NCBI GenBank assembly: GCA_002269645.1 | Contig: NIVC01001979.1 | Location: 124,001-188,000, forward strand | Direction of reading: 5' to 3' | Source of the DNA: Macrostomum lignano | Lineage: Eukaryota | DNA: 64,000 bases | Part shown: one piece after another, positions 1 through 63,290 of the stretch | How positions within the stretch are numbered: position 1 is the stretch's first letter | Layout: each line of letters begins with the position of its first letter | Notes under the pieces: model-generated | What the model saw: the letters and a program-made list of their open reading frames with translations, nothing else | Databases searched by the model: none | What the model was told of the DNA's origin: nothing | Program-made: the position numbers and the translations under genes

Positions 1-1072
1 CAAAGAATAATAGTTTTTAGCAAAAACAGTTACTTTAGAGTTTAGTGAAACTCTTATAATTTTTTAAGAATATTTTCTCTAAAAAATGTAGTACTCAAGC
101 TACTTTACACTTAAAGTAAAACTTTTTAATTTACGTTGGCATAGAATTGAAAAACTAGAAATTTCATTTTTTAGCACATGGGCCATGATTTGCATTATTA
201 CTTATTTTTATAGCTGGCATGCGCTTGCGCACTGCTCCAAAAATGTGCGCACACATTTTCCTAGGTACCCCCAAGCGAGAATTCCATCCTGGCTACCCAT
301 GTGTAATACAGATGATTGATGATATAGACTATAGTGTGCAATATAGGGCAATGTTCAACATAGCATAGCAAATATAAAAAAGATAGGGCCTAAAATGTAG
401 GCCTCTACATTTAAAATAAAAACCATTCATACTGTTACTGTGAAAAACACAATGTTTAAAAGGTTAAGTTAAAAATAAACATTTCTACTATTTCATTACA
501 TTTGAAAAAAATTTAATAAATATAACACCTAGAATAGATTTTAGAATAAAAGAGCAAAATACCTAGAGTAGATTAAAATGTTATGATTTTAAAATCCTGA
601 CGAGTTACAAATCAAAGAACCAGTTAAAATGGGGCTTTATGCCCTAGTTTTTAGGTTTTAGTTTTCTTTAATTTGCTATTGAGCTCGAAAAATTTTTCTT
701 AGGCCCTAACTACTGTCTTGACGTACGTAAGCAAGGTGTTTAAGCTAAGTTTATCCACGAATTTTTTATCACAGCTTGTAAAAATTGTAATGCCTCGAAA
801 AGTTTTGCTAGGATTGGCTAGGATAGGATGAGGGTCCTTATCACTTATTCTGTTACTAGCTTTAATCCCGTCAATCCAACTCTAACTACGAGCCGCGTAA
901 ATGCTCATATTGTTGAACTAGATGATGATGATTGACTACTACTGACGTCCGTATCAAACTAAAATGCAAGAAATTAGTTCAAAATATATGTTCTACGTAG
1001 AGCAGTAAAACTAAACAAACAACCTTTGTTATTCTTATTGATTGATTTGCGATAAACTACCATAGCTAAAAA

Positions 1073-1106
1073 GGTCTCTTACTGAGAAGACTCAATTTAT
1101 TGCATG
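1073..1106 (+). other. Spliced-leader (SL) exon-like sequence, dispersed copy
   Basis: GGTCTCTTACTGAGAAGACTCAATTTATTGCATG matches the recalled Macrostomum SL (..CGGTCTCTTACTGCGAAGACTCAATTTATTGCATG) with 1 mismatch. It ends in ATG as flatworm SLs do and is followed by TTAG rather than a GT donor. Confidence 0.75.
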
Positions 1107-1366
1107 TTAGCTATAACTCTCACGCCCAGTAGCGATGTCCAGGTTTGTCGCTCCTGAGCCCGGACCTCAGGCAGGGTCCATATGAGCCTTTTCATATTGC
1201 TTGTTCTTGTTCTGGAACCAGATCAAATTTGTAAAGTATTACTTTTTGTCGCCTAAACTAAAGGGATATTCTTGCTATAAGTTACACGAGCTAGTTATTG
1301 AATGGCAAGAAGAATTAGAAGAGAGTTTAAAATTATGCAATTACATTACATTACATTACAACGACG

Positions 1367-3900
1367 CTAGGGTCGGGGGGCGCTGGCGCGCACACGATTG
1401 CGAAAAAGAGGGGCAGGGCAGGTCGCAGCAGTCTGGGGAGTCAGTCCAATTGCCTCCAGGTCGGCAACAAGTGTCAGCTCCCGGAGCGTCTGGGTCCGCC
1501 CTTGGCCGCGACGGAACCGTTCGGTCGGCGGGTGCAGAACGGCCAGTCTGAGCGGGTTGTCGTCGCCGCGGGCGAACCGCCGCAGGCAGTGTCCCAGCAG
1601 CAGGTTGCGGTGCATTGCGTCCAGGGCCCGTTTGCGCATGGTTGTCATCGGGACAGCCTCCATGCCGTAGAGAATTGGATCGGCTCTACAGGCGCGGAAC
1701 AGGTGGATCTTCAGGTCGTCCCACGCTCCGGAGGTGAAGATCGGCCTGAGGTGGTGTATGGCGCGCCAGGCCTGGGTCCTCCTGTCCGCGATGATCGCCT
1801 CTGGGCTCATCACGAGGGTGCCTAGGTAGCGGAAGTCGCTGCACGTTGAGATGGCCTCGCCGTTGGGCAGGGTCAGCGGTGGGGCATTGTCAGCACCCAC
1901 ATGCAGCACCTCTGTCTTGCCTGCGTTAATCTGCAGGCCGATCCGTCGAGCGCCTTCCTCGGAGAGTCGAGTAAGAGCGTGCTGAGCTGCTACAGTGTCT
2001 CGGCACAGCAGCGCGATGTCATCAGCTGTCATCTCTGGAGTCAACGAACGCCTTGGAGTTGTGGTACAGGTCCATAACTGCCGTCACCAGGGTGTCGGGG
2101 ACGCCGCACTGAGCCAGAAGCCAGGCTAAAGCCGCCCTGCTCACAGAGTCGAAGGCCTTCCGGAAGTCAACGAAGACGATAGACACGGCTCGAAGACGAG
2201 TCTTGCAGGTTTCGACAATGCACTGAATGGCACAATCTGCTCCGTGGTGGATCTGCCTGGCCTGAAGCCGCTTTGGAGCTCGAGCGGCAGCGAGTTCAGG
2301 ACAGGAAGGAGCCGATTGCGCAACACTGCGTTCAGCAGCTTCGGCAGCGTGCACTCCAGTGCGATGCCGCGTTGGTTCTCAAGGCTCGTGGAGGCGCCCT
2401 TCTTCGGGATGGAGACAATTCTTGAAGTACGCCAGAGGAAAGCGGCCGTGGCAGCTGGGTCGCCGCCGAGACAGCAGTACTTGTTCAGGATGCTAGTAAT
2501 GCTGTCTGTGAGCTCTGGCAACTTCAGAACCCTGGGAGGCACTCGGTCGACTCCAGAGGCAGCGTCAGCGCGCATGCTCTTCAGCGCCTTGGTAACTTCC
2601 GCGGCGGTGATCGAGCCGGTGTAGAAGTCGCCATGCTGGGCTGGGGTGAAGCCGGCGGTGGGGAGAAAGGGAGACGTCGGGGAGGGGGCATTTAAAACTT
2701 GCCGGTAGTGGTCGACAAGCAGGCTCTTTCTTTGCTCGGTGAACTCATCGCCAACGACTGTGGTCGGACGAGGTCCTGTGAGGCGGTTGATTGCTCGCCA
2801 GGCAGCGATGTGCCGGCAGTTGTCGGTGGCGGTCTTGATTTCATGGACCACCTCCTCAATAAACACTTCAGTTCGTTGGGCGTACGTCACCTGCAGGTTG
2901 TCTCTGGCAAGTCTAGCCTGGTCGCTGTCTTCGCCGTAACGCGCAGCGGCGCTCTGTGCAGAGCGTCTGGCAGTGGCGATCACGGGGTCGCAGTCCCAAA
3001 GTGCCCTTGGCTGGTGTCCTATTTGTCTAGGCAGAACTGACGCTGCCGACCCGACGGCACTCGCAAAGGCCTCAGCTGTCTCAGTGATTGCGGGTCTCGC
3101 GTTGGAGAGCTCGGTCAGGAAGGCAGTGCGAGTCTCTGGGTTCCTCAGGTCTGCCCAGAGAGGCTTCGGCGGGGGGGGGCGTCTGAATCTCGTCCAAGAG
3201 AGGTTTAGTTCGCAGGCAACCAAGCTGTGGTCGGAAGCGACGCATCTGGGGCGGATGTTGATCACTCTGCGCACCCTAGAACGCATTGGGAAAAGGCAGA
3301 GGATCCAGTCCAGCCTTTTCGTTCTGCCGTTTGGGCCGAAGAAAGTCAGGAAGCTCCGCACCGGAGCTTCGCGAGCCGCTGCCGTAAAGAGCCATTCACT
3401 CCGACGAGGTTCCTAGACTGGATGAAGGTCTCCAGGAGGGCGGAGTTGGCGTTGGGCACGCCCCAGTTGTTCTTCACCAGGCGGCCATCAGGGGGCAGGG
3501 GCGCATTGAAGTCTCCAGCCACAAATATAAGGTCGCGAGCCGGGATTGAGTCCAGGAGGTGGCCAAGCCTGTCGTACAGGTCTTCAGTCTCGGCGGGGTC
3601 CTCGCTGGTCCTGGGGGCAGTGGGGGCGTAGATGCAGGCGACGTGCAACCGTCGGTTGCCTACGGAGAAAGTCACGTGGCCGAGTCGGTTTGTCAGGAAG
3701 CTGATGTTCAGCAGGGCTCTGGGTGCTGCTGGCGAGAGTAAAAAGCCAATGCCTCCTGTGCCACTGAGCGAGGCGGGCGCAGCTTTGAACCGCCACCCGA
3801 GGCCCAGATCGGCGCTCTCGTCAGTGGCCCTGCTATGCTCCTGAACTGCCAGGATGGAGATCTGCAGGTCGGAGGCCAGGCGAGCTAGCTCCTGCAGCCG
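1367..3900 (-). pseudogene. APE endonuclease-reverse transcriptase ORF of the RTE element (frameshifted; central RT segment deleted near 2040)
   Basis: ORF pieces 3346-3675, 2141-3361, 2022-2354 and 1367-2044 are collinear parts of one APE-RT polyprotein. The QGD-containing RT motif is missing between 'SKAFV' and 'ADDIA'. Confidence 0.85.
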
Positions 3901-4224
3901 CAGCTTGACAGGCAGATGGTGGGCCTGGCACCTGGGGATCTCTTCGTCGCTAGCATGTGCAGTGCGGGGGGGTCACACTTGGATGGATGTCTGGCCCTCT
4001 CGGCTCCGGCTGGGCAGGCTGCGAGTCCGGGTGAGGGCGGTGGCGGCGGGCAGCAGCACGAAGCTCCTTGCGCCGAGCATTGAAGCGCTGTTTGCGGCGC
4101 TCAGAAGCAGTCGGTGAGTCGCCAGCTTAGTTGCCGCACAGCCCGAGGGCGGCAACACCGTTGGCACCTGGCCCGCAGGAACGGCCGGAGGTGGGCGGCT
4201 CTAATTTACAATTGCTCAGAGTAA

Positions 4225-4268
4225 CATGCAATGAATTGAGTCTTCGCAGTAAGAGACCGTCTTTATGG
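4225..4268 (-). other. Complete 44-nt SL exon forming the 5' end of the RTE copy
   Basis: Minus strand reads CCATAAAGACGGTCTCTTACTGCGAAGACTCAATTCATTGCATG, 2 mismatches to the recalled SL CCGTAAAGACGGTCTCTTACTGCGAAGACTCAATTTATTGCATG. It is joined directly to the element body with no GT donor. Confidence 0.8.
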
Positions 4269-4419
4269 TCTCTTCTCTACCGTCTTCACGGTCTCTAAAA
4301 TTATGCAAGTGAGGCTGTTAAGGCAGTCAAACATTCAACAAAATTAAATATATTTATACTACTTTTTTATTGGAAGATCCGAACCGATTCTGGTTCTGGA
4401 ATTGGTAATGTGAAAAGTC

Positions 4420-4712
4420 TACATGAGAATTTCCCGCCGAGATTTGCCACGTGCATTTTGCCCGCGAGTGAATTGCCCGCAGAACTTTGCCCACAATGCT
4501 TTTTTCCTGCAACGTATTTAGCCACGCGGCAGATTTTGTCTGCGTTGCCTCCCAATGCTTTAGTATTCTTAAGCAGTTATACCATCGATCTAGGTTTTGA
4601 TCGGGTAAATCTCCCTCATTGAATTCTAAGCATTGTAGGCAAACCTCGGCGGGCAAATCTCCTGGCGGGCACATCTCGGCGGGAAAAATTTGTTTGCGGG
4701 CAATTCGACAAA
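4420..4712. repeat. Imperfect palindromic (MITE-like) segment
   Basis: Motifs GAATTGCCCGC and TTCCCGCCGAGAT at 4424-4480 recur as reverse complements at 4645-4710. Confidence 0.45.
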
Positions 4713-5009
4713 CAGGTGACAAAACGGTGTCGCCGTCACTGTCGTGACTGTCGGGGCGGCAACTGAGCTGGAGACCCACAGTGGACGCCGAAGTGAGCTG
4801 GACTCTGCGCGCCGCCGGCAGCGCTTTAATTTTTGGCGCTAGGAGCTCCGCACCGGAGCCCCGAGGGCCAGCACCTCCACCCCAACCGGCAACCCGCCGC
4901 AATGCACGCGCAAGCAAAACAGACGCAGAGACGAGCCGACCAACCAACACTTTTGGCCCAGATTCGGCTCGCCAACTTTTAACACCCGCGCACCCTGATC
5001 AGTCACCCG

Positions 5010-5460
5010 CTGTAGGCTGCAGCTGGAGCTGACCCGGTTGGCGGCCGACTGCTGGGCATCTCAGTTCTGGCTGTCCAAGAGCATCGCAGGAGCACGGACG
5101 AAAGCGCAGGCCTGGGCCTCGGTGGCGGCCTTGAATTGGCTTCGGGGGTGTTGGCTTCCTGCCCTCGCCCGCCGCTTCCAATGCAAAGCCCTGCTGGACA
5201 TCCGGCCGGTTTCCCCTCTTAAGCGCCTTGGTCAAGCGGCTTTTGCCCTGAAGGACAGGCGCGCCTGCATGTTGTCTGCGTGTATGCCCCGATAGCCCCT
5301 TGCACCAGCAAGAATCCCGCAGAGACTGAGGTCCTCTACGATACCCTGGTCACCTGCTGGATCTAATTCCATCCCGCGATATCTTGTTTTCGTTGTCGGT
5401 GACTTCAATGCGCCTTTGCCGGCTGATGGCCGCCTGGTGAAGAATTTCTCAAGAATTACC
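5010..5460 (+). mobile_element. Degenerate fragment of a related RTE element (APE domain)
   Basis: Frameshifted homology to the 1341-4295 element (..LAVQEH.., LHVVCVYAP, VVGDFNAPLPADGRLVKN). Confidence 0.75.
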
Positions 5461-6293
5461 GATCGCCAAGTCTGCCTATCTGTCCAGCTTCACCCAGGCA
5501 AGGACCACTAGATGTTACCGTTGTATCAGGACGTAACAGTCTTCTTAAATATTGCAAAAATATTTGAGGGCCTGTCTGTTTGAAGCATCAGCTAAATGTT
5601 ACGAGCGCTAGAAATAAAAGAGAAATATTCGCTCACGCCAGTGCGGTTGCACTCCTGAAAGCAGGCAGAGAGACCAAAGGAACATATGCGTGACGGAAAT
5701 TTCCAATCAACCTCTTTCCCCAGCAGAAAAAATTAAAGATGTGACACAAAATTTGAAGCTGGGAATACAAAAATAATCTCTACACATCATGCATGAATAC
5801 GCAAATGTCTATTTGCGCCTCCAAAATGCCTTGAAAATGCACAACCCATACCATTTATTTAGCTTACATTTATACTCGTACAAGTAAATTAATTCAAGGA
5901 ATCACATGTAGCTATATATAATACACGTTCGCACTCGTGCAAAAGGTCAATAAGCATTTGCCTTCAATTTTGCTGAATCATTTTAATTCACCGCATTCTC
6001 AATAGTATCTGTAGGGCCGGGCCAGTTCTCCGCATGGTCGAATATAAAGAAACAACTAAAATTTCAACGAAGAAGTGGCAAAAATTCGCAAAACGCCTAA
6101 GGTGCGTGACCTATCTTGTGAGCCTGTAGGACCATAAGGCGAATCTCCCAGCAGACTGCACTCAGTTCGGATCGATATAAAAGCTAGGGAATGTTCAACT
6201 AGGACGTGTCGGAATCAAACTTTTAATACTTCGGGAAGCCAGCTGCACCTTTGTTAATTTGATTTCTAGCTAGCACGCCAGGATCGAGGCAGA

Positions 6294-15212
<8,919 letters not shown>

Positions 15213-55492: not shown

Positions 55493-58398
55493 TCACTGCT
55501 GACCACCAAGATGATTAACCATGACTGACAGGCCAACAATAAGACCAACGACGATAATAAACGGCAGCCAGGTAAGGACGAGGCGAGGCCAGCTGCAATT
55601 TTTGTTTCGAAAAAATAATAAGTTTCTTTATTGGAATTGAATAAACAATCAATAACTCACTCACCTAACGTAGCGACAGTGCAGTGTAAAGAGAAAAAAG
55701 ATGCGGACCATGTTCCACGTCTTGCAGCCGGAGTACTCCATCTTGTTAAGCGCCATGGCCACATGACTGTGACAGTTGTCGCAGAATAAATTGTGCTGCA
55801 GATGGTTTGCGTAAGAATTTCACTGTGAAATTTGATGCTGGGTGAAATTCTCTGCCCAGATCATAGTCTGCTCTCCCGCACTGCACCCAGGTCATAGAGT
55901 CTGCTCTCCCGCACTGCACCCAGGTCATGGAGTCTGCTCTCCTGCACTGCACCCAGGTCATAGAGTCTGCTCTCCTGCACTGCACGCAGGTCATAGAGTC
56001 TGCTCTCCTGCACTGCACCCAGGTCATAGAGTCTGCTCTCCTGCACTGCACCCAGGTCATGGAGTCTGCTCTCCTGCACTGCACCCAGGTCATAGAGTCT
56101 GCTCTCCCGCACTGCACCCAGGTCATGGAGTCTGCTCTCCTGCACTGCACCCAGGTCATGGAGTCTGCTCTCCTGCACTGCACCCAGGTCATAGAGTCTG
56201 CTCTCCTGCACTGCACCCAGGTCATGGAGTCTGCTCTCCCGCACTGCACCCAGGTCATAGAGTCTGCTCTCCCGCACTGCACCCAGGTCATGGAGTCTGC
56301 TCTCCTGCACTGCACCCAGGTCATAGAGTCTGCTCTCCTGCACTGCACCCAGGTCATAGAGTCTGCTCTCCTGCACTGCACCCAGGTCATAGAGTCTGCT
56401 CTCCCGCACTGCACCCAGGTCATAGAGTCTGCTCTCCTGCACTGCACCCAGGTCACAGAGTCTGCTCTCCCCCGCTGATATTCTGCTTTCTGCTCTGCTC
56501 TGCTATTGCTCCCAGTTCACCAGAGTCTGCCTACCCGTAACTAAATTCAAAATAGACTACTTAAAAAGCACTCAGATAAAGCAATAAACACATATAGCTA
56601 ATCCATACCATGCGACCCTTGTAGACCTCGCTAGCATCATAGACAGCCCTGTCATAGACATCCCGTCCAACAGAGTCGATGTCCAGCTGCCAGTACTTGT
56701 AGGGCCAGCCAAAAGCCATCTGGTCCTCGCTTACTTCATATGGGCCAGCAAAATCGCGAACAACTCCAGCACTGGTGCAAATGCCCAGGTGGCCAATGAG
56801 GGGAATCAGCCAGCTGTGGCAGTGGTGGAGAGGAGTTCATTCATGAATGCATTTCTTCCTTGCACTAATATATCTATCCCACTAATCCCATATTAGTTTT
56901 TAGCTTTGTTAATTTAAACCTATTGTTGGAATTTCTTCATTTCAAATTTTTATAGCTGTAGTAACTACTTATTATAGTAATTCAACAATCAATATAGGCA
57001 GGTTACTTATTGCTGTTTATTTTTGGGATCTCCCCATCAAATGTACCTACCCAAATGTATAACTATTTTAGGATCTTGGTTGGCAATGGATTTCTACATA
57101 TTGACTGTATTTGGAGACTTTTATTGGCATAAAGTTACTTTTGAAGGAAGCTATAAGACTTCTGCTAATAAATAGTAGTCATAATATTATTATAAAACTG
57201 AATTATTTTTTAGAAAAAAGTGCTTATTTTCACTTCGATTTTTGGAAGTATAAATAACTCTTAAGTCATTTTATACAGAATTTTAACACATATACCATGC
57301 AAAAAGAATTAGAAAAAATTATCAAGCAGTTTTTCTATAATATGCATTCAAAGTCAGGCAACTTTATACATGTAAGGACTCTAGTAAGATGTTTAAAAAA
57401 AGAAATTTCTAACTTTATTATCTAATCTATTGTTAGAACCTAATGAAATAAGTGTTTTGATACTTCATTTATGAAATTTGGTCAAATAATCTGAAGTCAT
57501 AGCATTTTAGGGCCTTATAGCCAGGATGGAATCTTTGCATGACAATTTTAGAACAAAAAGTTACATGCAATTTTTGCACAAGTTTTTTAGCCTAAACTGC
57601 ATAATTTTTTTGCACTTGAATTTTTGAGCAACTTTTTTACAATGTTTCATTTAAGTTTAAATAAAACTTGAAAAATAAATTTTATAATTCTATTTTTAAG
57701 TTTCATAGTTCTTAGTGGCTTTGTTTTTAATATGCAATAACTTTGTTTTACTGTAACAAGTGCAATATTCAACATTTTCAAATAAAATTATGCAAGATTT
57801 CTTAGAACAATAAGCTGTAAGATGTAAACCTTTTAAAGTTGCGCAAGTTTGCCAGAAATGTGCACACAACTGCGCAAGTTTTTGTCAGCATGCACGGAAT
57901 GTGTCTAGGATTTTGTACAAAAATTCCATTCTGGCCTTATAGGAAAAATATAATTATTGTACATTATTGTCCTGAACGAACCAAAATAAAAAATGAGACT
58001 AAAAATGCTAAAAAAATTTATTACTTAACCAAATTTCACAAATGAGGTATCAAAATACATGTCACTATGACTAAGTTTTAACAGACAAAAAATTGGTAAA
58101 AAATCAAATTTTAAATTTTAATTCTTTCAATATTTTGCTGGAGTGGAGTTGCTACCATTATAAAAATTGTCATTGACATTAGTAACAGCAGTAGAACTGA
58201 AGAAAACCCCTAGTAATACTTAGTAGCAGCATACGTTGTCAGCATTCTGCTAAAACTAAAGTCATGCGTAGCATACCTAATACAAGGGAGTGGAGTCCAA
58301 ACAACACAATGAGGATAGCGATGTTTCGAAGGATTTATTCTTTTTTCCATTTGGTCTTTCTTCGTTTCGGCTGGTTCTGATTCTGATTTCTGCTGCAT
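55493..58398 (-). CDS. TMEM222: Transmembrane protein 222; exons 58398-58277, 56813-56609, 55795-55665, 55592-55493 (185 aa)
   Basis: RYPHCVVWTPLP, WLIPLIGHLGICTSAGVVRDFAGPY, MAFGWPYKYWQL, HNLFCDNCHSHVAMALN and C-terminal TM. GT-AG introns with consistent phases (2, 0, 2). Confidence 0.94.
55860..56470. repeat. 33-bp minisatellite CTGCACTGCACCCAGGTCATAGAGTCTGCTCTC (TMEM222 intron 2)
   Basis: About 18 tandem units. Confidence 0.96.
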
Positions 58399-59046
58399 AA
58401 AGTACAATCAGATCAAAGACAACTGTTTAAGTAACCACAGTTTATAATTTGTAAATTTGTCAACGTTACGGATTGTAAAGAAAAATTGTATTCTTGAACC
58501 CTAAGGCCGCTTGCTTGTTTACATTACAGTTTTGTTCACAATTGAAAAATATTGAAATCTATTAATTTTCAACAATTATGATTGAAAAAATAAACCGGAA
58601 TTATATTCAGAGGTTAAAAAATAAACTCTTTTTGTTTAAATGTTTTACAGTCTTGACTCGGCACAATGGCCCCTTTTTCATGACGCTATCTTCCAAGAAG
58701 AAAAGCAGTATAGCTATTTAACTTTGTTGAATGTTTGACTGCTTAACAGCTTCACTTTGCACAATGTTTCACTTTTCTACTTGGCTATTGCCATTAAATA
58801 TTAAATTTTTTTCGCACGCATATCCCGATCTAGTTTAGGAGAAAAAAGTTATACTTTACAAATTGGATCTGGTTCTAGAACCAGAACAAGCAAACATGAA
58901 AAGACCCATATCGTGAGACTTAAGTGTCGGCAATTGAGGTTTCTTATCGTGCTAGTCGCAGCGTCATTTTATTTAGCGGAATATCTTACGTTAAATAAAA
59001 AGGCAGAGTGATTTAGGCTATCAAAATGCAACAATGATGAAAAATA

Positions 59047-62463: not shown

Positions 62464-63290
62464 TTGGACTTCCTTGAGCCATCCTCCGGGGTGCTTCAGG
62501 GAGATACGCTTGCGCCGTTCCTGTTGGTCCTGGTGCTTGACTGGATGCTGCGGACCGCTCTCCCTTCTACCGACGACGGCTTTCTGCTGCAGCGACGCGT
62601 GGGTCGACGCCAACCGGAGAGGCGGCTCAGCGTGCTTGCCTGCTCCGACGGTCTCGTCATGTTGTCGTCGACCGTCGAGGGCGCCCAGCACCAGCTGGAC
62701 CGGCTGGTGAGCGTTTCAGCGAGTGTTGGCCTGGTGGTCAACACTCAGAAGACCGCGTGCTCTGCATGCCTGCCGGACGACATCAAAGCAACTATTTTGT
62801 GCGGACAGGTGACGAGGCTTCCCCGCTGTCAACAGTTTGTCTACCTCGGCGGTCTGGTGCCTGGCGTTTGCGAGGACCTGCGACGCCGCCGTGGACTTGC
62901 CTGGGCTGCCTTCCGTTCCGTGAGGGTCGTCCTGCAGTCTGAGACCCTGCCTGATCGCTAGAGGGCGGCGCTGTTTCAGGCGGTGATCGAGACCGTCCTG
63001 TTGTACAACGCCGAGACCTGGACGCTGACGGATTCGCTCGAACAACTGGTCGATGCGGCGCACGCTGGCCTGCTGCGCGCCGCCTTCAAGATCGGCTACG
63101 AGCGAGTCACCAATGCGGCACTCTATCGCTGCACCGGCCCAGCGAACTGTTGCGCCATCGGCGACTCCAGCTGGTAGGCCTTATTATCCAAGCTGAGTCG
63201 TAGTGCCCGCTGCCGGTGCAGGAGGTGCTGTTGCTCACGCTGCAGGCACCCTACCGGCGGGTGATGCCGGCGCCCCGGACACTGCCGGCG
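62464..63290 (+). mobile_element. 5'-truncated, degenerate RTE-clade LINE fragment (RT C-terminal half)
   Basis: GVLQGDTLAPFL, a mutated YADD region, VGLVVNTQKT, FVYLGG and IETVLLYNAETWTL. Confidence 0.85.

What the first reader, a model, noticed from the sequence alone, without database searches (positions are those of the whole stretch)
1341..4308. LINE retrotransposon apparently retroposed from an SL-trans-spliced RNA
Seen: inside a clean 13-bp TSD, the RTE element begins with a complete 44-nt sequence (4268-4225) ending in TTGCATG and fused to the element body without a GT donor. Knowledge (recalled, not searched): this matches the Macrostomum lignano spliced leader, and flatworm SLs end in AUG. 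Inference: the element's RNA was SL-trans-spliced and then reverse transcribed end to end. A family that does this routinely could gain a cap and a defined 5' end from read-through transcripts and may not need its own promoter. The alternative is that the family has permanently captured SL as its 5' UTR. The SL AUG opens only a 3-codon uORF (ATG TTA CTC TGA), so it is not the ORF start.
Basis: partly seen in the sequence, partly recalled or inferred. Interest (0 to 1): 0.82.

Follow-up and report, generated by a model that had tools for sequence, protein, structure and literature searches.

The report
Spliced-leader-capped RTE retrotransposon copy
One copy of a flatworm jumping gene carries the host's 44-base spliced-leader tag at its front end, inside its insertion scars, so it was copied into DNA from an RNA the host's trans-splicing machinery had already processed; this is a clean example of something already suspected in parasitic flatworms.

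Summary
Window 4295-1341 (minus strand) is one insertion flanked by a perfect 13-bp target-site duplication. A paralogous repeat at 58688-58911 crosses the same site uninterrupted, with one copy of the duplicated sequence. Reading 5' to 3', the insert has four parts:
- A 44-base sequence matching the published Macrostomum lignano spliced leader (SL) at 42 of 44 positions, with the same two ends.
- An RTE-type LINE body (endonuclease plus reverse transcriptase) with three frameshifts and a roughly 190-bp deletion.
- A 26-base 3' UTR ending in (TGTAA)4.

The SL stops exactly at its exon end (ATG) and continues TTACTC. A true SL RNA gene recovered from a metagenome continues GTAAG. The 27 extra bases are made of pieces of the SL's own 5' hairpin, which looks like snap-back or template switching when reverse transcriptase reached the end of an SL-headed RNA.

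The best reading is full-length retrotransposition of an SL-trans-spliced RTE RNA. The window cannot show whether the SL was gained in this generation or inherited from an SL-headed parent.

The same interpretation has already been offered for SL-bearing transposon loci in Schistosoma and other parasitic flatworms, and Hydra transposon transcripts carry SL. This is therefore a new, unusually clean member of a known kind.

The parts
4296..4308 (-). 5' copy of the 13-bp target-site duplication, TTGCATAATTTTA
   Evidence: The paralogue at 58688-58911 has one copy.
4269..4295 (-). 27-nt 5' filler, GAGACCGTGAAGACGGTAGAGAAGAGA. It contains a direct partial copy of SL nt 1-13 (4291-4279). Its last six bases, AAGAGA (4274-4269), extend the SL 5' hairpin into a 10-bp palindrome.
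   Evidence: 12/13 match to the SL, reached by 0 of 2000 shuffles; palindrome count; the modelled cDNA 3' end folds into a self-primed hairpin; the 51-nt region has z = -4.5.
4225..4268 (-). Complete spliced-leader exon (44 nt), 42/44 to the M. lignano SL, ending in ATG
   Evidence: literature.
4118..4224 (-). Post-junction leader starting TTACTCTGAGC. It contains the 3-codon uORF from the SL AUG (stop TGA at 4218-4216) and no other upstream ATG. The start codon of the element is not identifiable.
3364..4117 (-). N-terminal region, including the DSQPAQPEPR motif at 4027-3998, and the apurinic-type endonuclease domain. There is a frameshift inside a C7 run at about 3975-3969.
   Evidence: Pfam Exo_endo_phos; tblastn HSPs.
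1370..3363 (-). Linker, reverse-transcriptase domain and C-terminal region. Frameshifts lie at about 3362 and 2232. A deletion of about 63 codons lies between 2037 and 2026. No in-frame stop occurs in the aligned parts.
   Evidence: Pfam RVT_1, truncated at profile position 100.
1341..1369 (-). Stop codon TAG (1369-1367) and a 26-nt 3' UTR, CGTCGT(TGTAA)4. There is no poly(A).
   Evidence: RTE clade hallmark according to PMC1291365.
1328..1340 (-). 3' copy of the 13-bp target-site duplication
58688..58911 (+). Paralogous copy of the ~231-bp host repeat into which the element inserted. It serves as an empty-site analogue and is 77% identical to 4378-4309 plus 1340-1180.

Best explanation
A source copy of this RTE-type LINE was transcribed. 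(Shown steps and inferred steps are marked in brackets.)

1. The host spliceosome trans-spliced the 44/45-nt spliced leader, with its cap, onto an acceptor lying at or next to the start of the element's ORF. This removed whatever 5' UTR or upstream read-through sequence there was (inferred).
2. RTE endonuclease and reverse transcriptase, made from this RNA or supplied in trans, nicked the target at TTGCATAATTTTA inside a ~231-bp host repeat. It primed reverse transcription on the (TGTAA)n tail (inferred from the standard target-primed mechanism).
3. Reverse transcription ran to the last base of the SL (shown: the SL is complete).
4. At the RNA's end, the cDNA 3' terminus, which is complementary to the SL's own 5' hairpin, folded back or switched template. 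This added 27 bases made of SL-hairpin pieces (inferred from the sequence).
5. Second-strand cleavage 13 bp away produced the TSD (shown).

The new copy carries SL in place of an acceptor, so it cannot be trans-spliced at that site again. It is now also disabled by three frameshifts and an RT deletion.
For: - Single insertion: perfect 13-bp TSD. A paralogous repeat crosses the site with one TSD copy. GC is 61% inside the element against about 43% in the flank.
- SL identity: 42/44 to the published M. lignano SL with identical ends.
- Exon only: the SL is followed by TTACTC, not GTAAG as in the SL RNA gene (L007). No SL-intron or SL-gene upstream sequence occurs anywhere in the window. Metatranscriptome mRNAs L004, L005, L006 and L008 show the same SL ending in ATG joined to unrelated exons.
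- The template's 5' end was the SL's 5' end: the filler contains SL nt 1-13 at 12/13 (0 of 2000 shuffles reach this). AAGAGA extends the SL hairpin to a 10-bp palindrome. The modelled cDNA end folds into a 3'-paired hairpin.
- Junction position: the SL AUG lies 66.7 codon-equivalents upstream of the conserved DSxPAxPEPR motif. In eight intact relatives the start codon lies 51-68 codons upstream of it (motif at residue 52-69), and three of those were fetched and carry 96-466 nt of contig sequence upstream of the called start. So a 5' UTR is missing exactly up to the ORF start, as trans-splicing acceptors usually leave it.
- The SL is not an old shared feature: a 67%-related RTE 5' fragment in the same window (4713-5504) has no significant SL remnant at the equivalent place.
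- The body looks young: 0 stops in 907 aligned codons. This is compatible with an SL that was canonical at insertion and has since taken two transitions.
Against: - Only one copy of the family was available. No unspliced master with an acceptor AG before TTACTCTGAGC was seen, and no RNA data were available.
- As it stands, the SL-headed RNA has a stop four codons after the SL AUG and no other identifiable start. It therefore looks like a poor messenger for the element's own protein, which sits awkwardly with cis-preference.
- The exact origin of the 27-nt filler is not resolved. A simple one-step snap-back predicts only its last 6 bases.
- The filler could instead come from a 5'-extended SL RNA, if the M. 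lignano SL gene has that sequence upstream. The related gene in L007 does not, but it does have a partial GCCGTAAA duplication upstream.
Confidence: 0.6

Rival explanations
1. Inherited (captured) SL. Trans-splicing happened once in an ancestor. The SL has since been part of the family's 5' end. Each new RNA starts at or near SL nucleotide 1, driven by an internal promoter or by some other 5'-end definition.
For: - The anatomy of a single copy cannot separate this from splicing in the current generation.
- LINE internal promoters that start at nucleotide 1 are well known (general knowledge).
- A retroposed SL-headed copy has lost its acceptor, so any further propagation of SL-headed copies would have to work this way.
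Against: - The SL is still 42/44 canonical, and both changes are transitions.
- The 67%-related RTE fragment shows no SL at the equivalent site, so any capture is recent.
- The filler abuts the TSD directly, so the RNA's 5' end was at the SL. This model therefore requires very precise initiation from a leader of only about 100 nt.
- No promoter evidence was obtainable.
Confidence: 0.25
2. No splicing of the RTE RNA took place. During target-primed reverse transcription the enzyme reached the 5' end of an RTE RNA (full-length or truncated) and jumped onto another template. That template was a free SL exon intermediate or the 5' end of some SL-headed mRNA. The result would be a chimera like the U6/L1 chimeric retrocopies of mammals.
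For: The 27-nt filler shows that template switching or snap-back did occur at this 5' end. LINE reverse transcriptases are known to jump templates (general knowledge).
Against: - The junction is exactly at the SL exon's last base, with no SL intron and no foreign mRNA sequence between SL and RTE.
- A jump into an SL RNA or an SL-mRNA would rarely land on that base.
- Free SL exon is a transient, scarce intermediate.
- The junction coincides with the expected ORF start, as trans-splice acceptors do.
Confidence: 0.06
3. Assembly artefact: a chimeric join of cDNA-like or mis-assembled repeat reads. This is the caveat raised for the Schistosoma cases.
For: - The genome is highly repetitive, and one frameshift lies in a C7 run, which hints at long-read indel errors.
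- Boroni et al. raise this caveat for S. mansoni.
Against: An artefact would not produce a perfect TSD, a matching empty-site paralogue and a properly tailed 3' end.
Confidence: 0.03
4. Site-specific insertion of a LINE into an SL RNA gene, as with NeSL-1, SLACS or CZAR. In that case the SL would be flanking host DNA.
For: SL and LINE are adjacent.
Against: - The SL lies inside the TSD.
- The flanks are an unrelated ~231-bp repeat with an empty paralogue.
- No SL intron or SL-gene upstream sequence is present.
- The SL exon is intact rather than split.
Confidence: 0.01

Closest known systems
SL-bearing transposon loci in parasitic flatworms (Boroni et al. 2018, PMC5832876; the 2025 MBE survey of 24 species, PMC12582326)
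   Same: Genomic SL exon sequence is fused to LINE or LTR elements. [quoted passage not shown]
   Different: In those papers the loci were by-products discarded from SL-gene searches. They are described as mostly partial leaders, and the passages read give no boundary analysis. One paper allows that they are assembly chimeras. Here the SL is complete, lies inside a TSD with an empty-site paralogue, carries a 5' snap-back signature, and is in a free-living macrostomid.
DinoSL-tagged retrogenes of dinoflagellates (PMC6050394, PMC12014239)
   Same: A DNA-encoded spliced leader at the 5' end marks a copy as reverse transcribed from a trans-spliced RNA.
   Different: Those are host genes, often with stacked truncated relic leaders from repeated recycling. 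Here the tagged RNA is the retrotransposon itself. The extra upstream piece is a 5' fragment of the SL, not a 3' relic.
SL on transposon transcripts in Hydra (PMC12220107)
   Same: Host SL trans-splicing acts on transposable-element RNAs. About 30% of TE Iso-Seq reads carry an SL.
   Different: That is RNA-level evidence only. It does not show that SL-headed RNAs were re-integrated.
RTE clade LINEs: RTE-1 of C. elegans, and SR2 and SR3 of Schistosoma (PMC1291365)
   Same: - About 3.2 kb with a single ~1040-1066-aa ORF carrying endonuclease and RT.
- A very short 3' UTR of AT-rich pentamer repeats.
- A 10-13-bp TSD.
- An unclear or unusual translation start.
   Different: The described members have their own 5' UTR. 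This copy has the host SL in its place. RT phylogeny was not run here.
U6/L1 chimeric retrocopies (own knowledge, not searched)
   Same: A small nuclear RNA sequence is found at the 5' end of a LINE-derived insertion inside one TSD.
   Different: Those arise by template switching, contain the whole snRNA, and join at variable LINE positions. Here only the spliced exon is present, and it is joined at its exact 3' end.

Membership tests
RTE clade non-LTR retrotransposon | Single large ORF with an N-terminal apurinic-type endonuclease followed by reverse transcriptase | tested here: met
   Pfam Exo_endo_phos plus RVT_1 on the conceptual protein. Colinear with 1037-1060-aa single-ORF relatives.
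RTE clade non-LTR retrotransposon | Very short 3' UTR made of AT-rich 3-5-mer repeats, with no poly(A) | tested here: met
   The 3' UTR is 26 nt, CGTCGT(TGTAA)4, directly abutting the TSD. Criterion taken from PMC1291365.
RTE clade non-LTR retrotransposon | Length of about 3.2 kb, with no separate gag-like ORF1, RNase H or zinc-knuckle domain | tested here: met
   2955 bp plus a ~190-bp internal deletion. Only two Pfam domains were found. This is negative evidence only.
RTE clade non-LTR retrotransposon | RT or EN phylogeny places it with RTE-1, BovB and SR2/SR3 | not tested
The closest hits are unnamed metagenome proteins.
Retrocopy of an SL-trans-spliced RNA | Complete SL exon that ends at the exon/donor boundary, with no SL intron and no SL-gene flanks | tested here: met
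Retrocopy of an SL-trans-spliced RNA | SL and downstream sequence lie inside one target-site duplication, and the site is empty elsewhere | tested here: met
Retrocopy of an SL-trans-spliced RNA | A source locus with an outron and AG acceptor at the junction, and SL-junction reads in RNA | not testable with these tools
The protein database holds no near-identical copies.
SL RNA gene | SL exon followed by a GTAAG donor, an Sm-like site and two further hairpins | tested here: not met
   L007 shows the real gene layout. Both SL copies in the window lack all of it.
SL-gene-specific LINE (NeSL-1, SLACS, CZAR type) | Element inserted within an SL RNA gene, with the flanks being the two gene halves | tested here: not met
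   The flanks are a ~231-bp dispersed repeat. There is no SL-gene sequence in the window.
Template-switch chimera (U6/L1 type) | Whole small RNA, including its 3' part, joined to the LINE at an arbitrary position | tested here: not met
   Only the spliced exon is present, joined at its exact 3' end and at the expected ORF start.

The most novel reading that the evidence does not exclude
This Macrostomum RTE lineage has no 5' UTR, promoter or start context of its own. It depends on host SL trans-splicing of read-through transcripts to obtain a cap, a defined 5' end and possibly the initiating AUG. The acceptor sits exactly at the ORF start, and neither RTE 5' region in the window has an ATG of its own upstream of the conserved N-terminal motif. 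SL-headed copies would then be the normal product of the family rather than an accident.
Probability: 0.12. Interest if true: 0.7.

Novelty: new member of a known kind. Interest (0 to 1): 0.4.

Why it matters
- It gives a boundary-resolved example of what earlier flatworm surveys only suspected: host SL trans-splicing acts on LINE RNA, and the spliced RNA can complete retrotransposition. The example has a complete leader, a TSD, an empty site and a 5' snap-back.
- Such copies are natural time-stamps of retroposition.
- They confound SL RNA gene finders and trans-splice-site mapping, because SL reads map end to end at these loci.
- They raise a testable question: do some LINEs use the host SL in place of their own 5' UTR and promoter?
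- The filler suggests how a LINE reverse transcriptase behaves at a structured 5' end.

Tried and rejected
- The third occurrence of the TSD 13-mer at 57783-57795 was checked as a possible empty site. Its flanks are unrelated. The real empty-site analogue is at 58688-58911.
- I looked for a degenerate SL upstream of the related RTE fragment (4309-4712). The score was 29 against shuffles of 23 ± 3.7, so it is not significant.
- I tested whether the 73 nt after the second SL (1107-1179) resemble the leader after the first SL. They do not. A match to RTE#2 at 4801-4867 is marginal (4 of 300 shuffles), and a peptide hint (APEPGP against PEPRGP) is not significant.
- The 5' ends of five related metagenome elements (L001-L003, L009, L010) carry no SL. 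They come from other organisms and say nothing about this family.
- The protein database has no copy closer than 64% identity, so family 5' ends could not be collected.
- Rfam finds no family in the window or in L007. The SL pattern is absent from viral contigs.
- A search for a TSD for the second SL unit gave only chance-level 10-mer matches.
- SL AUG as ORF start: it is in the frame that matches the RTE#2 N-terminus. However, two stops within 9 codons, against 0 in 907 aligned codons, argue that this stretch was not coding in that frame.
Full report
**What is there.** On the minus strand the sequence reads as follows:
- flank
- TTGCATAATTTTA (4308-4296)
- 27 nt, GAGACCGTGAAGACGGTAGAGAAGAGA (4295-4269)
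- CCATAAAGACGGTCTCTTACTGCGAAGACTCAATTCATTGCATG (4268-4225)
- TTACTCTGAGC..., about 2.86 kb of GC-rich coding sequence
- TAG (1369-1367)
- CGTCGT(TGTAA)4 (1366-1341)
- TTGCATAATTTTA (1340-1328)
- flank

GC is about 61% inside the element and about 43% in the 2-kb bin holding the 3' flank.

**Is it one insertion?**
- The 13-mer is perfect on both sides. It is AT-rich and occurs a third time at 57783-57795 in an unrelated context, so the repeat alone is not decisive.
- The two flanks together (4378-4309 plus 1340-1180) form a ~231-bp dispersed repeat. A second copy lies at 58688-58911.
- That copy aligns continuously across the insertion point at 77% identity and holds a single TTGCACAATGTT.
- Everything between the two 13-mers, including the 27 nt and the leader, therefore arrived in one event.

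**Is it the spliced leader?**
- The M. lignano consensus is CCGTAAAGACGGTCTCTTACTGCGAAGACTCAATTTATTGCATG (PMC5173321). The 35-nt core is in PMC8629364. M. cliftonense and M. hystrix have the same leader (PMC10468722 supplement).
- The window sequence matches 42/44 with the same first and last base. Both differences are transitions.
- A metagenome scan with the leader found five contigs.
- Four of them are transcripts with the leader at their 5' end, joined after ATG to unrelated exons.
- The fifth (L007) is a genuine SL RNA gene. It has GCCGTAAAG...TTGCATG followed by GTAAG, an Sm-like U-rich site and further hairpins.
- In the window the leader is followed by TTACTC. Neither the SL intron nor the SL-gene upstream sequence occurs anywhere in the 64 kb.
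- Only the spliced exon is present, which is the product of splicing and not a gene fragment.

**The 27 extra bases.**
- Bases 4291-4279 (CCGTGAAGACGGT) are a direct copy of SL nt 1-13 at 12/13. None of 2000 shuffles reaches this.
- With the four bases before it, the 17-mer at 4295-4279 repeats 4272-4256 at 15/17.
- The six bases just 5' of the leader (AAGAGA, 4274-4269) are the reverse complement of SL TCTCTT. They extend the leader's natural 4-bp hairpin (CCGT/ACGG) to a 10-bp palindrome.
- The 3' end of a cDNA copied from the leader folds into a hairpin whose last four bases are paired, in 70% of the ensemble. Extending that end would write exactly AAGAGA upstream of CCGT on the sense strand.
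- I read the filler as snap-back and/or template switching when the reverse transcriptase ran off the end of an SL-headed RNA.
- The full path that made all 27 nt is not resolved. A templated origin from a 5'-extended SL RNA cannot be excluded without the species' SL gene.

**The element.**
- The conceptual protein has Exo_endo_phos and RVT_1 domains.
- It is colinear at 54-59% identity with unnamed 1037-1060-aa single-ORF proteins on 3.3-3.9-kb marine metagenome contigs.
- With the pentamer-repeat 3' UTR and the 13-bp TSD, it meets the structural hallmarks of the RTE clade as listed in PMC1291365. RT phylogeny was not run.
- Defects, by region: a frameshift inside a C7 run at the N-terminus/endonuclease boundary (about 3975-3969); a frameshift at about 3362; a frameshift at about 2232; and loss of about 63 codons of RT between 2037 and 2026.
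- There is no in-frame stop in 907 aligned codons, so the copy is young. Some indels may be long-read errors.

**Where the leader is joined.**
- The conserved N-terminal motif DSxPAxPEPR starts at residue 52-69 in eight intact relatives. In this copy the SL AUG lies 66.7 codon-equivalents upstream of it.
- The three relatives whose contigs were fetched have 96-466 nt of contig sequence upstream of their called start codons. This copy has none.
- The leader has therefore replaced the whole 5' UTR right up to the expected ORF start, which is where trans-splice acceptors typically lie.
- The SL AUG is followed by TTA CTC TGA and a second stop at codon 9. With zero stops elsewhere, these are unlikely to be decay, so the 3-codon uORF was probably already in the RNA.
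- There is no ATG between the junction and 4080, and that one is out of the coding frame. The start of translation is unknown. RTE elements are known for unclear initiation.

**Other SL and RTE sequence in the window.**
- A 5' fragment of a 67%-related RTE lies on the plus strand at about 4713-5504. It shows no significant SL remnant upstream, so the leader is not an old shared feature of this RTE group.
- A second exon-only SL copy lies at 1060-1106 on the plus strand. Its 3' 33 nt match with one mismatch, its 5' end is degenerate, and it again ends at ATG without GTAAG.
- What that second SL heads could not be identified. After 73 nt it runs into the ~231-bp repeat.
- Two exon-only leaders in 64 kb suggest that such retrocopies are not rare in this genome.

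**Mechanism and rivals.**
- Best reading (0.6): the RNA template of this very copy had been SL-trans-spliced and was reverse transcribed in full by target-primed reverse transcription.
- Main rival (0.25): the leader was gained the same way in a recent ancestor and has been inherited since.
- Template jumping without splicing (0.06), misassembly (0.03) and insertion into an SL gene (0.01) fit poorly.

**Known or new?**
- Boroni et al. 2018 reported six SL exons merged to transposable elements in S. mansoni. They suggested 'trans-spliced retro-transcribed elements' while allowing for assembly chimeras.
- A 2025 survey of parasitic flatworms discarded 597 SL-like loci associated mainly with LTR and LINE elements, and gave the same explanation.
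- Hydra Iso-Seq shows SL on about 30% of TE reads.
- Dinoflagellate retrogenes are routinely recognised by a DNA-encoded leader.
- I found no report for Macrostomum.
- The finding is thus a clean new example of a known kind, not a new kind.

**Limits.** No other copy of the family, no RNA data and no raw reads were reachable. Whether the family does this routinely, or needs it, remains open.

Noticed in passing
window 1060-1106 (+), with 1107-1179 downstream: A second exon-only spliced-leader copy, CCATAGCTAAAAAGGTCTCTTACTGAGAAGACTCAATTTATTGCATG, followed by TTAGCTATAAC and not GTAAG. It heads an unidentified 73-nt segment that ends where the ~231-bp repeat begins. It is probably another retrocopy of a trans-spliced RNA.
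   Followed up: partly
window about 4713-5504 (+): A 5' fragment of a second RTE-like element, 67% identical to the first and heavily decayed. It is cut off at about 5504. No ATG occurs between about 4557 and 4902.
   Followed up: partly
window 4422-4501 versus 4628-4671, and 4638-4687: Just upstream of the second RTE fragment, an inverted duplication of its extreme 5' part has arms of 27-44 bp (82-85% identity) and a ~126-nt spacer. A 14-nt tandem repeat, GGCAAATCTCGGCG x3.4, also lies here. This may be another 5' snap-back product.
   Followed up: partly
window 1180-1340 plus 4309-4378 (possibly to about 4427), and 58688-58911: A ~231-bp dispersed AT-rich repeat with two copies in the window. 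The copy that hosts the RTE insertion appears to have ~45-bp terminal inverted repeats, so it is MITE-like.
   Followed up: partly
window 6639-7960: A 1.3-kb minisatellite with a 23-nt unit, AATGAAATGGCGCCTCTCTCTCA, in about 56 copies at 78% matches.
   Followed up: no
window 6294-6506 (+): First exon of a secreted phospholipase A2-like gene. It has a signal peptide and a YGNYCGPGG motif. The Pfam Phospholip_A2_1 match has E = 7e-7, just under the gathering score for this partial exon.
   Followed up: partly
window 62482-63138 (+): A fragment of a different reverse transcriptase (36% identity to the RTE relatives; weak RVT_1 match), from another LINE family.
   Followed up: no
L007 615-735 (JGI metagenome contig Ga0302322_100095745): A complete Macrostomum-type SL RNA gene in an environmental metagenome, with the 45-nt exon, GTAAG, an Sm-like site and three hairpins. 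GCCGTAAA is duplicated 15 nt upstream of the transcription start. Four SL-headed mRNAs come from another sample (Ga0316592). No Rfam model detects this SL RNA.
   Followed up: partly
3' ends of window 1400-1370, L001, L002 and L003: The RTE relatives from marine metagenomes share a conserved GTGTGCGCGC motif near the stop codon with the window element. It may be the 3' recognition site of the reverse transcriptase.
   Followed up: no
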